Both the position numbers and the translations under genes were made by a program. A stretch of DNA of 64,000 nucleotides from Blastocystis sp. Blastoise (Eukaryota > Protista > Bigyra: Opalinata). The DNA lies in the NCBI GenBank assembly GCA_039096225.1, contig JBBPEB010000005.1:434001-498000 (forward strand), written 5' to 3'. The notes under the pieces are model-generated. The model saw nothing but the letters and a program-made list of their open reading frames with translations, was not told the origin of the DNA and made no database searches. This document shows positions 1,095 through 41,611 of the stretch, piece by piece. Positions within the stretch are counted from its first letter, which is position 1, and each line of letters begins with the position of its first letter.

Positions 1095-4057
1095 TATATT
1101 TAAAAAAAGTATATATATATTATTAAATATACTCTCTATTGAGTATATATAGATATTAAAATAATATAATAAATAAAAATATATGAATATATTAAAAGTA
1201 TATATTGATGATTCTTTGTTAATAATAATAAATAGACTATTACAAAACGATCAATAAAGAAATCAGTTCTAATTGGTATTGGAACGAGTACATTTTTAAG
1301 TTATCCTATGTATATGATTCATATAATGATATAATATGTATAAATAAATGAATATATAGTGTTCATTCTTGGAAGACACTTCATAATTATGAGATTCATC
1401 ATTTAAATAATATACCAATATGTAAAGAAAGATATCCTATTTGGATAAAGAATAGGAATGAAAAATATAGTTTTTCAATAATGAATTATTTAAGATGTTT
1501 AAAAGAACAAACGAAGAAAATTATAAAGATTCCATTTATAATAGATTATAAATCCTTAGGAAAGAGTATAGTTCGTTTTTCTCGAGTAGGAATATATAGT
1601 CCAATTTTATGTGGAGATTATATATGGACTTATTATGCATATATACCTCTATGTAAATATCTTAATACTTCAGATAATATTGAAGAGATAGAACATCGAT
1701 TGAATGAAAGAGAAAGTAGACGATTATGTAGTATTTTATTAAAGAATAAAGGATTATATGCGAAATTAGGACAAAGTATAAGTATTATGCCATCTGTATT
1801 TCCTCCTGAATATATTAATAATATGAAACCTTGTTTTCTTTCTTCTTCTTCTTCTAATTGTTCTTCTTCTTCTTATTCTATAAAGAAGATCTATAGAATA
1901 GTAGAAGAAGATATTCATCAGAATCCAAAAGATTTATTTAAATCATTTGATCCACAACCTATAGCTACAGCATCTATTTCACAAGTATATAAAGCAGTAC
2001 TTAAAAGTGGTGAAACTGTTGCTATTAAAATTCAACATCCGTATATATAATAATAATAATATATTAATAATAATAATAATAATAATAATATATAGTAGAA
2101 TAGAAGAAACAACAAAAATAGATTTATTTTTATTAAAATTGATTACTAAAAGTATTAGTCGTTTATTTCCTTCTTTTAGTTGTTATTGGAAGATTCAGGA
2201 ACTTTCAGAAACATTAAATAAAGAATTAGATTTTTCAAAAGAAATTGAAAATATGGAAATATGTCGACAAATGGCAAAACCTTATAAAAATATAGTGATT
2301 CCTACAGTATATCGTGATTATTGTTCAAAACGAATTATATGTATGTCTTATGAAGAAGGTATATCTATTGGAGATTCTCAAACTATACAAAATAAAAAGA
2401 TAAATATGTCTTCTGTTTTATCTTCGTTTGTTTCTTTCTATAATGATATGATTTTTAAATATAAATATGTTCATGCAGATCCACATATGGGAAATATATT
2501 AATACGTGAAAAGAATAATCATACTGAATTAGTATTATTAGATCATGGTCTGTATCAATCTCTTTCTCCTGATTTTATTCAACAATATTCATCATTTATT
2601 ACAAATACTTTTAAAGGTTATATTGATAAGAGTCGTGATTCTATAAAACAAATATTAGAAGATACAAAAGAAGGAATTCAAAAGATTAATAATAAAATAG
2701 AAGAAAAAGAATTATATAATATTGAAGATATATTTATGAATATATTTAATACTACATGTACAAATAAAGATTTATTGAATGATACTGACAGTAATAAACT
2801 TCGAAATGAATTAATAAAAACAATAATGAAAAATATGTCAACTTTAGGTTTATGTTTCACACGAATAACTACTAATCTATCGATGACTTTAAAAACATTT
2901 AATTCATTACGTTCTATTCTTATTCCTTATGATAAAACTGTATATATATATTTATTTATATTTATTAATATTTCTTTTTTAGAATACTTTATATGTGAAT
3001 TTCTTTCTTTCATGTAATCAATATATATGTCAACAAAAGAATAATCAAGCAAATACTATTTTAGAATCATTTATTACAAAAATCAATCTCTATTTATCTA
3101 CTGTATATAATAATAATAATAATAATAATAATAATAACATTTTTTTTAGACTCTTCAAGAATGTATGAAATATATTATTTAAATTAATATTATTTGATTT
3201 TTATTTGTAAAAAGAATATTATTATTCTTTTCTATCTTTTCTTTCATGTATATTATATTTTCTTTTATTTAATAATAATAATATTATTATAGTTGTGTTA
3301 TTTTATTTAAATATATTTTTTTTATTTGTAAATAAGAAATTATATTTATTTCAATAATATTATTTTTAATTATAATTATATAAGAAATTTTTTTTTTGAT
3401 ATAAGATAAAAATATAACAAAACAATATTCATTTCTATTAATAGAAATAAAAAATATATTAAGAAATAAAGAGAAATTTATAATAATAAATATATTTTCT
3501 TTTATTTAAAAATAAGAAGAAGAAATATGAATATATATATATAATATAAATATCGATTATACTGCTGCTGTTGATGGATTTATAGAATTATTATTATTAT
3601 TATTATTATTATTTGATGTATATTGAATAATATGATTATTAATAGAATTAGAAGTATTAGATTCTATATATTTCTTTTTACTTTGATATTCAATTTCATT
3701 ATTATTATTATTATTATTATTATTATTAATTTTTTCTTTCTTATTATTTGTTGTTTTTATAATTTGATGATTATTTTGTTGAGTATGAACTGTTAAAGGA
3801 GGAGAAGACATTCCTTTTGTGGGTGACATATTCTGAACAGAAGAAGAAGATGTATATGATTTCTGTCTATTTAATATAGATTGATCTGTCTTTACCCAAG
3901 AAGTTGATATATAAAAATCATAAATCTGTTTTGTCTGATTTATATCTATTTGCAATTTCTTTGATAAATTCTCTTTATTCACTTTCTCATTTCTTAATAC
4001 TTCTTGTAATATAACATTCTTTATCGATATGTAATGGCGAGGTAATATATGTATATA
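1095..4057 (+). repeat. Left arm of ~2.96 kb inverted segmental duplication
   Basis: Reverse complement of 38030-40987 apart from four introns, microsatellite lengths and a few substitutions. Confidence 0.97.
1183..3182 (+). CDS. ABC1/UbiB (ADCK1/5-like) atypical protein kinase, copy 1, with probable mitochondrial presequence
   Basis: Motifs YAKLGQ, PIATASISQVYKA, VAIKIQHP, ELDF..E, HADPHMGN, LLDHGL. GT-AG introns 1198-1235, 1310-1359, 2041-2095, 2940-2982 and 3103-3149 restore one frame ending TAA 3180-3182. Confidence 0.9.
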
Positions 4058-6123
4058 AGAACAAAAATCTTTTTCACTTTTTGTTAATAATGAATAATCT
4101 TCAAATGATGAAATATCAAGTGGAATTACCCTAGATAATATAATAATAATAATATAATAATAATAATGTAATATAATAATATATACTTTGAATTTGAATT
4201 TGGTGTTGGAAGAGAACTATATATATATATATCATATGCTTAAAATTAAAAAAAAATACAATAGATATATATATGTATATACGAAATAGGAGTATTATTA
4301 GTATTATTACTGTTATATTGATTCATGTTTTCATATTCATATATTTGTTCTAATGTAGTTATACCATTCTTACGATGTTTCTGAAGTTCTTTTATTCGTT
4401 GACGAAGATTCTCTTCAGTTATTAAATCTATATATATATATATATATATATAATATAATAATAATAATAATATAATAATAATAATAATAATAATAATAAT
4501 AATAATAATAATAATCTAATTATATATATATATATATACTTGAAGCTAATTCTTCATATTCATCTTTAGATAAAAAACGGGCAAATGGTTTTATATGGCT
4601 ATAAACTAATTTCTCCTCCTATTTATAGAAATATAAATATAATAATTAAATAGCAAATATTTAAAACATATATATATATATATATACTTTAGTTCGTTTT
4701 TTTTCTTGTGCTTGAATTCCTTTTATATCTAATAATCCCCGATCAAAAATAAATTTCTTTTTTTCATTTCTATCATTTAAACGGCCTATATATATATTTA
4801 TGATGAAACTATATAATAATTCTATAATAAATTTATATACAAACTTCTAATAAAAAAATAATAATAAATATATAATATACGATTAAAAATTCTTAATAAA
4901 GAGAGTTTATAATTCATTTCTTTCTCATCTTCTTCTCCTGTTATTTCAATATCTTTAATAATATTTTCTAAATCATTATCATATTCAAAGTCAAAGTCTT
5001 GTCTATATGGCCAATAACCCTGAATATCATCACCTGGACCTACATATCTATATATATATATAATAATAATAATATAATAATAATAATAATAATAATAATA
5101 TAATAATAATATAATAATATAATAATATATATATATATTATTAATAAGTCTATATTATATAATAAAATAAACATAAATATTCTAATAATATGTATAAAAT
5201 AATTATATATGAATTTTATAAGGATAAGGAATGAATTAAAAAGTAAACAATAATAATAATTATATATACTCAGGAACAGGTTGTTCTTCTTGAATATCTA
5301 GATATGTAAACAAATAACATATGAACAAAACATGAAAACATATAATATATGACAATATTTATATAAGAATAAACATATATTTACCATCTGATTGCTTTGG
5401 TTTAAGAGGTTGATTGACATCAGGTAATGGAAACGTAGAAGAATTAATATAAGTACTAAAGTAATGATCTAAGCACTTGTTCTCACTCTTATCGCCAAGA
5501 AAATTTGAAGTTTCTCTAAAAATAATAAAAAAAACGATGATAAAAAACGAATTCTTTTAATAAAGAAAAAAAAACGTTAACAAAAACACAATTAAAATGA
5601 GAGAAATATATATATTATGACATAAGAGTAATGAGATTCATAAGAGAAACAACAGTAACATACTCCCAATTACCCATACCAAATATTTGACCTGCTTCAA
5701 GTAACTTCATTTCATCAAGTGCAGACCAACCTTCTTGAAATAACGTTATAGAATTTAAATTATGCATTACACAATAGCTGTGTGTCTTTTTGTGAGTAGC
5801 AGATTCTTTACCAGATAGCATACAATCACCACAATAAATCATATCCCCACATTCAGGACATCTGAACTGTATTGAATTTGTAATATCCTAAAGAAAATCA
5901 ATGACTTAAGAGACAAAGCAATACTCGTTGACAAAAAGAACATCTGACAAACACATTACTTTGAGATATAGGCGTGTAGGGATCCAAACCATCTATATTA
6001 TCGATAATTATCAAGTAAAAATCAGCTTACGGTACATTTCTGCATCAGTTTTTTTCTTATATTCTGTTGTTGATCTATATAAATAAGTATATATAAAATA
6101 AACTAATACTTTTGAGCTTCCAT
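3557..6123 (-). CDS. ADA2: Transcriptional adaptor ADA2 (SAGA complex)
   Basis: ZZ zinc finger (CSFC..CPEC..CGDC..H..H), SANT (WSALDEMKLLEAGQIFGMGNWE), GYWPYRQDFDFEYDND motif and C-terminal SWIRM-like region, over about 10 GT-AG introns. Confidence 0.9.
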
Positions 6124-40899: not shown

Positions 40900-41611
40900 A
40901 TATTTTTATTTATTATATTATTTTAATATCTATATATACTCAATAGAGAGTATATTTAATAATATATATATACTTTTTTTAAATATATATAATAGAAATA
41001 TTTATGGGGAAAAAGATTCGTTGTTCTTTTTTTTATGCTATTCTATTTATCTGAAAGAAAAAACGAATTATTGAGAAGAATATTCGATATATATTATATT
41101 CTAATTCATTATATTATAATTCTTATTTTACTTTTCTTTTTTTAATATATATTTATAAAAAAAGAAAATAAAGACAGTTTCTTTAAAGAATAATGAATAG
41201 AAATCAGTTTAATCTGATATAATCTGAATATTAATAAAGTTTCTTTATCAATCAAAATATCAAATTGTTAAGAAAATCAAAAGAAAAAGTCAAAGAATAA
41301 TATATAGAAAAATGATTAAAGAAAAGAAAAAGAGAAATGAAGAGAAACCATTGTTGTTCTTTGTTCTCAATCACGATTTATTTATTCTTTATACTCTAAT
41401 AATTAATATTTTCAAGAATTATCAAATTCTTTGGAATATTCTAGTTTTTCTTTTTTTTCTTTTTTAAACAAACAATTATTATTCACAAAAGAATTCAAAA
41501 AATTGACTATATTCTTATCAATATTCATGTTTTTTATTTCTTTCATTCAATTTTTATAATCTCTTATTTCATTATTTATTTATTTATTCATTTATTCATT
41601 TTTATTTATTT

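What the first reader, a model, noticed from the sequence alone, without database searches (positions are those of the whole stretch)
1095..40987. Four precise, reciprocal intron presence/absence differences between two near-identical inverted copies
Seen: arms 1095-4057 and 38030-40987 differ by only a handful of substitutions. Copy 1 alone has introns 2041-2095 (55 nt, CATCC|TAGAA; empty site 40000/40001) and 2940-2982 (43 nt, AAACT|AATAC; empty site 39156/39157). Copy 2 alone has 40267-40307 (41 nt, GACAA|AGTAT) and, in the convergent ADA2 gene, 38095-38144 (50 nt, TTAAG|AAATG). All four are base-exact GT-AG, and three other ABC1 introns are shared. A single retrocopy cannot explain this: the differences are reciprocal, affect genes on opposite strands, and intergenic DNA is retained. 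Inference: intron turnover here is about as frequent as point mutation, via mRNA/cDNA-templated intron deletion or de novo insertion of microsatellite introns. The four introns share no unique sequence and no consistent TSD (only AG or TAG overlaps), unlike classical Introners. Serious alternative: assembly polishing with spliced RNA reads.
Basis: partly seen in the sequence, partly recalled or inferred. Interest (0 to 1): 0.92.

Follow-up and report, generated by a model that had tools for sequence, protein, structure and literature searches.

The report
Recent gene duplicates losing introns reciprocally
In a tortoise-gut Blastocystis genome, two almost identical inverted copies of a 10.7-kb DNA segment differ by six exactly excised introns, which suggests this organism deletes introns unusually fast, probably by copying spliced RNA back into DNA.

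Summary
The window comes from Blastocystis sp. 'Blastoise', apparently tortoise isolate Rus-B.

- **Extent.** The "breakpoint" at 1095 is a 4.26-kb Helitron-like element inserted into copy 1 after the duplication. Beyond it the homology resumes. The true arms are about 10.7 kb: copy 2 is 38030-48877.
- **Differences.** The arms differ by 40 substitutions and six base-exact GT-AG intron-sized indels.
- **Polarity.** Two indels are polarised as losses. DnaJ intron B sits at exactly the position and phase of an intron in catfish and Capsaspora DnaJ. The ADA2 intron survives only in copy 2's dead 3' gene fragment and is absent from the intact, transcribed gene. The other four are unpolarised.
- **Other evidence.** RNA contigs show the two copy-1-only ABC1 introns and the shared ones spliced out. 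Intact reverse-transcriptase ORFs are present in the genome. The published assembly used only DNA reads for polishing.
- **Limits.** No raw DNA reads could be laid. Rate estimates are blurred by gene conversion.

The scan had already noted the same pattern at other loci of this genome. The mechanism is of a known kind; the tempo is unusual.

The parts
1..1094 (+). 3' part of a 4,256-bp non-autonomous Helitron-like element. The whole element is window -3161..1094, which is G000:C31:430839-435094. It is present in copy 1 only. Its 3' end is a GC-rich hairpin followed by CTTG.
   Evidence: The terminus 1035-1094 has at least 40 copies in the genome, many 100% identical. The empty site in copy 2 is at 40987/40988, inside TATA|TATA, with no target-site duplication. 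Homology between the copies resumes on the other side of the element.
1095..4057 (.). Inner part of arm 1, holding ABC1 and the 3' end of ADA2. The outer part of arm 1 lies left of the window at window -10942..-3162, which is C31:423058-430838 (loci L030 and L031).
38030..48877 (.). Complete arm 2, inverted relative to arm 1. It holds the ADA2 3' fragment, ABC1, DnaJ and a 1529-aa surface-protein gene.
   Evidence: About 10,736 bases align between the arms, with 40 substitutions (0.37%) and about 18 small microsatellite or homopolymer indels.
1167..3245 (+). ABC1/ADCK-type kinase gene, copy 1. Copy 2 is at about 38892-40915 on the minus strand. The exons of the two copies are 100% identical.
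   Evidence: Pfam ABC1, 2.8e-71. NCBI protein P0001 maps onto both copies with their own introns. A 1906-nt mRNA contig covers the gene.
2041..2095 (+). ABC1 intron i4. It is 55 nt, phase 2 and found in copy 1 only. The empty site in copy 2 is 40000/40001.
   Evidence: The mRNA contig's pieces end at 2036 and resume at 2101; the 9 record letters between them fit exact removal of 2041-2095.
2940..2982 (+). ABC1 intron i5. It is 43 nt, phase 0 and found in copy 1 only. The empty site in copy 2 is 39156/39157.
   Evidence: The mRNA contig's pieces end at 2934 and resume at 2983; the 5 record letters between them fit exact removal of 2940-2982.
40267..40307 (-). ABC1 intron i3. It is 41 nt, phase 0 (KLGQ|SIS) and found in copy 2 only. 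The empty site in copy 1 is 1774/1775.
38095..38144 (+). Intron of 50 nt kept in the truncated ADA2 3' fragment of copy 2 (fragment 38030-38577, + strand). It is absent from the intact ADA2 of copy 1, at site 3992/3993.
   Evidence: The fragment starts in mid-exon within the SWIRM domain, with stop codons upstream. No ADA2 N-terminal exons lie nearby.
3557..5842 (-). Intact ADA2 gene of copy 1. Its last exon is 4130->3557 with a SWIRM domain. A ZZ/SANT exon lies at 5615-5842, and the 5' end was not mapped.
   Evidence: Pfam SWIRM, 7.4e-8, and a weak ZZ_ADA2 hit. An mRNA contig lies on 3764-4130 with no mismatch, so it matches copy 1's alleles at 3825, 3845 and 4037 and crosses the arm end at 4057/4058.
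41612..43429 (+). Mitochondrial-type type I DnaJ gene, copy 2, with about 7 introns. Copy 1 is on the minus strand of L030, at about 6214->4500.
   Evidence: The J domain, the CxxCxGxG zinc finger and the C-terminal domain are readable in the frames. Relatives are listed.
42280..42330 (+). DnaJ intron A. It is 51 nt, phase 0 (VDMD|ELLRHF) and found in copy 2 only. The empty site in copy 1 is window -4449/-4448 (L030 5551/5552).
   Evidence: One of two equivalent placements is GT..AG, and the intron contains an in-frame stop.
42927..42985 (+). DnaJ intron B. It is 59 nt, phase 0 (HLYLHIQ|TIPDPFF) and found in copy 2 only. The empty site in copy 1 is window -5045/-5044 (L030 4955/4956). It sits at an ancient intron position.
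   Evidence: It has the same column and phase as introns of Ictalurus DNAJA3b and Capsaspora DnaJ, in an ungapped block.
43714..48303 (-). Intronless 1529-aa surface-protein gene, intact in both copies.
   Evidence: The copies differ by 12 substitutions in 11 codons: 5 synonymous and 6 non-synonymous.
1198..1235 (+). Shared ABC1 intron i1, identical in both copies. The other shared introns are i2 at 1310-1359 and i6 at about 3103-3149.

Best explanation
A 10.7-kb segment carrying a surface-protein gene, DnaJ, ABC1 and the 3' end of ADA2 was duplicated as DNA in inverted orientation, 34 kb away on the same chromosome of Blastocystis sp. 'Blastoise'. That step is shown by the sequence. Since then the copies have gained 40 substitutions, about 18 microsatellite indels and one Helitron-like insertion.

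Individual spliceosomal introns have also been deleted exactly at their GT..AG borders from one copy or the other. This is shown to be loss for two of the six and inferred for the other four. Under that reading, copy 1 lost ABC1 i3, DnaJ A, DnaJ B and the last ADA2 intron. Copy 2 lost the adjacent pair ABC1 i4 and i5.

The inferred mechanism is recombination or break repair templated by spliced transcripts. The template could be cDNA made by the genome's own reverse transcriptases, or the RNA itself. I speculate that the AT/AAT microsatellites filling these introns act as breakage sites that start such repair. I also speculate that cDNA from the sister copy explains why the ABC1 exons are completely identical.

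Per intron, loss has run at very roughly 40-120 times the per-site substitution rate. DNA gene conversion between the arms makes this figure uncertain.
For: - All six indels are exact GT..AG and leave the reading frame identical to the spliced product.
- Three of the four window introns have no microhomology at their junctions (read from the junction sequences). This argues against simple genomic deletion.
- mRNA contigs leave out i4, i5 and the shared introns at the same borders.
- DnaJ B matches a catfish and a Capsaspora intron in position and phase within an ungapped conserved block. My estimate of the chance of this is about 1-5%.
- The ADA2 intron persists only in a truncated fragment with no upstream exons, while the intact transcribed gene lacks it.
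- i4 and i5 are adjacent and are missing together.
- There are at least 20 RVT_1 matches, and at least 13 sit in open frames of 2,400-2,800 aa.
- No intron has a second copy in the genome.
- Copy 2's ends carry no poly(A) and no target-site duplication.
- The published assembly was polished with DNA reads only.
- Earlier notes of this scan report the same pattern at other loci of this genome. These are leads, not independent proof.
Against: - No raw DNA reads were available. Both runs that hold the stretch gave only contigs: X2 is a polyA RNA library, and X1 is on record only as a guessed RNA run whose contigs are spliced and end in Illumina adaptor sequence. The twelve site states therefore rest on the assembly alone.
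- Four of the six introns (ABC1 i3, i4, i5 and DnaJ A) could not be polarised. No close relative's DNA is in any collection. Distant ABC1 orthologues share none of the three positions exactly.
- The classical 3' bias and adjacency are only partly seen. ABC1's 3'-most intron is kept in both copies. DnaJ A and B were lost around a retained intron.
- Divergence is uneven: about 8 substitutions per kb at both arm ends, fewer inside, and none across ABC1, P about 1e-4. Gene conversion is therefore acting, the duplication is older than 0.37% suggests, and the rate is an upper estimate.
- No spliced-RNA-templated event was observed directly.
Confidence: 0.6

Rival explanations
1. The duplication is old and its arms are kept alike by DNA-level gene conversion. 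The intron differences built up slowly at ordinary rates. They persist because 40-60-nt heterologies end conversion tracts. The events are still real intron losses, but the tempo is not unusual.
For: Divergence is U-shaped along the arms: about 8 substitutions per kb in the outermost kb at each end, against 0-5 inside and none in 2.2 kb of ABC1.
Against: Even the arm ends are only about 1-1.6% diverged. Both ends are non-coding or pseudogenic, so relaxed constraint explains part of the gradient. The dead ADA2 fragment is still 98.8% identical. Six separate heterologies would each have had to escape conversion while everything between them, including shared introns and intergenic DNA, was homogenised. 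Three intron differences lie inside the tract with no substitutions.
Confidence: 0.15
2. Loss and gain are mixed. The two polarised introns were lost, but some of ABC1 i3, i4, i5 or DnaJ A are new introns inserted after the duplication, as microsatellite-like introns or by reverse splicing.
For: No distant ABC1 orthologue (annelid, bivalve, hemichordate, plant) has an intron exactly at i3, i4 or i5. The introns are low-complexity AT/AAT sequence.
Against: None has a donor copy or a family of similar copies; the genome matches are partial, 82-93% low-complexity hits. There are no target-site duplications beyond 0-2 nt. No known process inserts 41-59 nt with ready-made GT..AG ends and no duplication. 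i4 and i5 are left out of the mRNA contig. i4 lies 11 nt from an old plant-animal intron. i5 lies 3 codons from a plant intron in an ambiguous stretch of the alignment. Every case that could be polarised is a loss.
Confidence: 0.1
3. Assembly artefact. Both copies really carry all introns, and spliced sequence (RNA or cDNA reads, or a mis-polish) removed some of them at random from one copy or the other.
For: No raw DNA reads could be examined. RNA-seq was generated in the same project. Exact GT..AG removal is what spliced reads would produce. Multi-mapping between identical copies would give a reciprocal pattern.
Against: The published pipeline is Flye on Nanopore DNA, racon x4, Polypolish x3 and POLCA x1 with Illumina DNA. 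RNA-seq was used only for annotation. As I recall from general knowledge, not checked here, these short-read polishers make small edits and do not delete 41-59 nt. The ADA2 intron is missing from the expressed gene but kept in the fragment, and DnaJ lost two introns around a retained one. These patterns also fit biology. The same pattern is reported at other loci, which an artefact would also produce, so that is neutral.
Confidence: 0.1
4. Copy 2 arose as a semi-processed retrocopy of a long, partly spliced read-through transcript.
For: Copy 2 lacks i4 and i5. The ADA2 intron would be antisense in an ABC1 read-through transcript and so could not be spliced out.
Against: The duplicate is 10.7 kb and includes genes on both strands with most introns retained. 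It has no poly(A) or target-site duplication. The apparent transcript-start boundary at 1095 is a transposon insertion. Copy 1 lacks four introns that copy 2 keeps, which this model does not explain.
Confidence: 0.03

Closest known systems
mRNA/reverse-transcriptase-mediated precise intron loss (Fink model; cDNA recombination shown experimentally in yeast; comparative surveys such as PMC3652778 and PMC4683709, titles and abstracts seen)
   Same: The deletion is exact at the splice junctions. One adjacent pair is lost together. The affected genes ABC1 and ADA2 are expressed. Reverse-transcriptase genes are present in the genome.
   Different: Here the losses are seen between paralogues only about 0.4-1% diverged and in both directions. 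That implies a per-intron loss rate tens of times the per-site substitution rate. There is no clear 3' bias. No processed pseudogenes were examined.
Transcript-RNA-templated double-strand-break repair (yeast experiments; recalled from memory, not checked here)
   Same: It would give short local tracts that remove one intron and leave its neighbours, as seen for DnaJ A and B and for ABC1 i3.
   Different: It is not demonstrated in this organism. The idea that microsatellite introns act as break sites is my inference.
Intron presence/absence polymorphism and intron loss in duplicated genes (Drosophila, Daphnia, and Arabidopsis or rice segmental duplicates; recalled from memory)
   Same: Base-exact presence/absence of single introns between very similar sequences.
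   Different: Here 6 of about 14 intron positions differ within a single young duplicate. The same pattern recurs at several loci of the genome according to earlier scan notes.
Introners / transposon-driven intron gain (PMC9860276, abstract seen)
   Same: Short introns differ between near-identical sequences, and the organism is a stramenopile.
   Different: There is no family of similar copies, no terminal repeats and no target-site duplication. Both introns that could be polarised are old.

Membership tests
RNA-templated (RT-mediated) precise intron loss | The deletion coincides exactly with the splice junctions, so the exon-exon junction equals that of the mRNA. | tested here: met
   Six of six indels are GT..AG and restore the reading frame. 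The mRNA contig's pieces leave out i4 and i5 at the same borders.
RNA-templated (RT-mediated) precise intron loss | The intron was present ancestrally, so the event is a loss and not a gain. | tested here: inconclusive
   Met for DnaJ B, which has an ancient position and phase. Met for the ADA2 intron, which is kept only in the dead fragment. Not resolved for ABC1 i3, i4, i5 and DnaJ A.
RNA-templated (RT-mediated) precise intron loss | Adjacent introns are lost together and loss is biased to the 3' end. | tested here: inconclusive
   i4 and i5 are adjacent and lost together, and the ADA2 intron lost is the gene's last. However, ABC1's last intron is kept in both copies, and DnaJ A and B flank a retained intron.
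RNA-templated (RT-mediated) precise intron loss | A source of reverse transcriptase exists in the genome. | tested here: met
   At least 20 RVT_1 matches, of which at least 13 lie in open frames of 2,400-2,800 aa. Pfam RVT_1 scores 1.6e-33 on L020.
RNA-templated (RT-mediated) precise intron loss | The affected gene is transcribed. | tested here: met
   ABC1 and ADA2 (copy-1 alleles) are in RNA contigs of two studies. DnaJ was not tested.
Introner-type intron gain | Many near-identical copies across the genome, with terminal repeats and target-site duplication. | tested here: not met
   Each of the three introns searched (i5, DnaJ A, ADA2) has only its own full-length match. The other hits are partial low-complexity matches that do not reach the intron ends. 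Junction overlaps are 0-2 nt.
Processed or semi-processed retrocopy | A poly(A) tail, target-site duplication, absence of flanking non-transcribed DNA, and introns missing from one copy only. | tested here: not met
Assembly or polishing artefact | Raw genomic reads contradict the assembled intron states. | not testable with these tools
   Only contigs of RNA-type runs were served. The published methods list DNA-only polishing.

The most novel reading that the evidence does not exclude
This AT-rich Blastocystis lineage is deleting introns now, at tens to a hundred times the per-site substitution rate. Breaks in its microsatellite-filled introns are repaired from spliced transcripts. When the transcript comes from a paralogue, the same events homogenise exons, which amounts to cDNA-mediated gene conversion. 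This would explain an ABC1 pair with three intron differences and no substitution. The organism can be cultured, so intron loss could be measured directly in it. It might also show how the human-associated subtypes came to be so streamlined.
Probability: 0.3. Interest if true: 0.82.

Novelty: new member of a known kind. Interest (0 to 1): 0.6.

Why it matters
Intron loss is usually inferred across long evolutionary distances, and its mechanism is still argued from indirect patterns. Here six clean events sit inside one young duplicate of a culturable protist, next to intact reverse-transcriptase genes. Similar cases are noted elsewhere in the same genome.

If raw reads confirm the states, the rate is high enough to look for new intron-less alleles by deep sequencing of cultures. 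That would allow a direct test of whether cDNA or RNA is the template. It also bears on how Blastocystis genomes became streamlined.

For annotation, the result shows that paralogue pairs in this assembly cannot be assumed to share gene structure.

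Tried and rejected
1. **Raw-read test.** Both runs that hold the stretch gave only contigs: X1 is a guessed RNA run and X2 a polyA gut metatranscriptome about 98.5% identical. 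No DNA run was offered. These contigs cannot tell the ABC1 copies apart, because the exons are identical.
2. **Close outgroups.** None was found for ABC1 or DnaJ in the 5.8-billion or 1.84-billion protein collections. P0001's own contig is withheld.
3. **Distant ABC1 orthologues.** Gene structures of Dimorphilus, Mactra, Ptychodera and Erythranthe were mapped, and none has an exact match to i3, i4 or i5. Syncephalis failed to map. L011, L013 and L016 are intronless.
4. **Reticulomyxa DnaJ.** The annotation seems to read into an intron near site B, so it was not used.
5. **Introner or donor-copy test.** Only low-complexity partial hits were found. One 39-nt hit family was inspected and does not reach the intron ends.
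6. **Retrocopy model.** There is no poly(A) or target-site duplication.
7. **Unbiased search for other duplicates of the rest of the window.** The search was swamped by simple repeats and did not even return the self-match, so it is uninformative.
8. **ADA2 intron position in other eukaryotes.** Not tested.

Searches used single exons by reference (window:39034-40266:- and L030:5166-5693:-) or the stored protein P0001. Exons were joined only inside local scripts, to read frames.

Full report
**Organism and assembly**

The large ABC1 exon of copy 2 (window:39034-40266:-) is 100% identical to the NCBI protein WA158_007505 of Blastocystis sp. 'Blastoise' (P0001). The window is G000:C31:434001-498000 of a 33.3-Mb assembly in 34 contigs, about 20% G+C. 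This fits the Russian-tortoise isolate Rus-B of Lind et al. 2025 (PMC12129017: 33.3 Mb, 33 scaffolds). That link rests on size and source and is my inference.

That assembly was made with Flye from Nanopore DNA. It was polished with racon (four rounds), Polypolish (three rounds) and POLCA (one round) using Illumina DNA reads. RNA-seq served only for annotation. The paper discusses intron length but not intron loss between paralogues.

**The observation**

- Arms 1095-4057 and 40987-38030 differ by 8 substitutions, all between 3281 and 4037, plus a few microsatellite indels.
- There are four intron-sized indels: 2041-2095 and 2940-2982 in copy 1 only, and 40267-40307 and 38095-38144 in copy 2 only.
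- Three have a single possible placement, and it is GT..AG. The fourth has two placements, one of them GT..AG.
- Removing each one restores the reading frame. P0001 maps onto both copies, each through its own set of introns.
- A 1906-nt contig from an Illumina RNA-type run of the same organism (X1) skips 1198-1235 and 1310-1359 as listed joints. Its laid pieces also leave out 2041-2095, 2940-2982 and the last shared intron. A gut metatranscriptome (X2) holds a spliced ABC1 mRNA that is about 98.5% identical.

So these are working spliceosomal introns.

**The duplication is larger than reported**

The 60 bases left of 1095 are the terminus of a repeat with at least 40 copies in the genome, many 100% identical. 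After fetching DNA left of the window, the outer flank of copy 2 (40988-48877) aligns at 96-99.5% identity to window -3162..-10942.

Copy 1 is therefore interrupted by a 4,256-bp non-autonomous element. It has a 5'-TT start and a 3' hairpin followed by CTTG. It has no target-site duplication and is inserted in TATA|TATA. Copy 2 has the empty site, so the insertion came after the duplication.

The true arms are about 10.7 kb and are separated by a 34-kb unique spacer. They hold four features:
- an intronless 1529-aa surface-protein gene;
- a mitochondrial-type DnaJ gene;
- the ABC1 gene;
- the 3' end of ADA2.

Over about 10,736 aligned bases there are 40 substitutions (0.37%) and about 18 small microsatellite or homopolymer indels. 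There are two further GT..AG indels, both in DnaJ and both present in copy 2 only. Intron A is 42280-42330 (VDMD|ELLRHF). Intron B is 42927-42985 (HLYLHIQ|TIPDPFF). Of roughly 14 intron positions in the duplicate, six differ between the copies.

**Loss or gain**

Two introns can be polarised, and both are losses from copy 1.
- **DnaJ intron B.** It lies in the ungapped, conserved G-x-L-Y ... F-x-R-x-G block. It is at exactly the column and phase (0) of an intron in Ictalurus DNAJA3b (ITFR|VQRSP) and in Capsaspora DnaJ (VVLQ|VGSHP). By my estimate a chance coincidence is of the order of 1-5%. Intron B is therefore old, and copy 1 lost it.
- **The ADA2 intron.** Copy 1 carries the whole ADA2 gene, with a ZZ/SANT exon at 5615-5842 and a SWIRM exon at 4130->3557. 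An mRNA contig lies on 3764-4130 with no mismatch, so it matches copy 1's alleles at 3825, 3845 and 4037 and crosses the arm end at 4057/4058. Copy 2 carries only a fragment that begins in mid-exon at 38030. It has stop codons upstream and no ADA2 N-terminal exons nearby. The fragment keeps the intron and the intact, transcribed gene lacks it. The simplest reading is that the fragment preserves the state at duplication and the parent gene lost the intron afterwards.

For ABC1 i3, i4, i5 and DnaJ A no polarisation was possible.
- No close relative's DNA is in any collection.
- Four intron-rich distant ABC1 orthologues share none of the three positions exactly.
- i4 is 11 nt from an intron shared by a plant and a hemichordate.
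- i5 is three codons from a plant intron in an ambiguous part of the alignment.
- DnaJ A lies in an unalignable linker.

Against gain, none of the three introns searched has a second copy or a family of similar copies in the genome. Junction overlaps are 0-2 nt.

**Mechanism**

This section is inference. The genome has at least 20 reverse-transcriptase matches, and at least 13 lie in open frames of 2,400-2,800 aa.
- i4 and i5 are neighbours and could have gone in one tract.
- DnaJ A and B flank a retained intron, and ABC1 keeps its 3'-most intron. The tracts therefore seem short and internal, which suits local break repair better than full-length cDNA replacement.
- A semi-processed retrocopy origin for copy 2 is excluded by its size, its genes on both strands, and the lack of poly(A) or target-site duplication.

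**Tempo and a caveat**

Six of about 28 intron copies were lost. Divergence is 0.37% overall. It is about 0.5% at synonymous sites of the surface gene (5 synonymous and 6 non-synonymous codon differences) and 1-1.6% in the non-coding arm ends. This gives a per-intron loss rate of roughly 40-120 times the per-site substitution rate.

The substitutions are unevenly spread. There are about 8 per kb in the outermost kb at each end and 0-5 per kb inside. There are none in the 2.2 kb of ABC1, and the probability that all 40 miss that tract is about 1e-4. This looks like gene conversion between the arms, so the duplication is older than the mean divergence suggests and the rate is an upper estimate.

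The three ABC1 intron differences lie inside the tract with no substitutions. Either they post-date its last homogenisation, or the events that removed them used cDNA of the sister copy and homogenised the exons as well. I cannot tell which.

**Artefact**

The published pipeline gives no route for spliced sequence to enter the assembly. I put an artefact at about 10%.

**Relation to earlier scan notes**

The same reciprocal pattern was already noted at other loci of this genome: Era, AKR, RTRAF, TLDc, UTP20 and others. Two follow-ups concluded differential loss of old introns. I did not re-test those loci, and they would share any assembly-wide artefact.

This locus adds several things:
- a corrected, larger structure for the duplication;
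- two more intron events;
- two independent polarisations;
- a transposon insertion that post-dates the duplication;
- a rate estimate and the signature of gene conversion.

**Verdict and procedure**

The mechanism is of a known kind and the tempo is unusual. It is worth confirming with the deposited DNA reads.

The single read-laying run used 3,301 letters.

Noticed in passing
window 1-1094 (whole element G000:C31:430839-435094): A 4,256-bp non-autonomous Helitron-like element with a 5'-TT start and a 3' GC hairpin followed by CTTG. It has no target-site duplication and is inserted in TATA|TATA. At least 40 copies share an identical terminus, so the family was active recently. The (TC)n array at 362-713 lies inside it.
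   Followed up: partly
G000:C23:75618-76424 (L020) and at least 19 other places: Reverse-transcriptase (RVT_1) domains lie inside open frames of 2,400-2,800 aa. Many matches have identical scores, so these look like intact, recently active retroelements. The element class was not determined.
   Followed up: partly
window 1095-3280 versus the rest of the arms: There are no substitutions across ABC1, although neutral divergence elsewhere in the duplicate is about 0.5-1.5%. Divergence is highest at both arm ends. This looks like gene conversion, possibly cDNA-mediated.
   Followed up: partly
window 1185-1480: The mRNA contig and an open frame support an ABC1 start at about 1185 (MNILKTITK...). 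That is two exons and about 70 residues upstream of the annotated start of P0001 at 1481.
   Followed up: partly
window 1236-2611 (run X2): A polyA gut metatranscriptome holds a spliced ABC1 mRNA with 18 single-base differences listed over about 1.26 kb. Nine of them are G>A. It is probably a related strain, and the bias fits AT-biased mutation.
   Followed up: no
L011 (ENA metagenome scaffold, 45.7 kb): A gut-metagenome contig of 19.8% G+C encodes an intron-poor ABC1 homologue (36% identity). Its neighbours are the eukaryotic genes Ebp2 and Peptidase_C97. It comes from an unidentified AT-rich gut eukaryote.
   Followed up: no
window 43714-48303 (minus strand): An intronless 1529-aa repeat-rich surface-type protein with a C-terminal transmembrane helix. 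It is intact in both copies, which differ at 5 synonymous and 6 non-synonymous codons.
   Followed up: partly
window 4058-38029: The 34-kb unique spacer is flanked by 10.7-kb inverted repeats. Such repeats could mediate inversion of the spacer. This was not tested.
   Followed up: no
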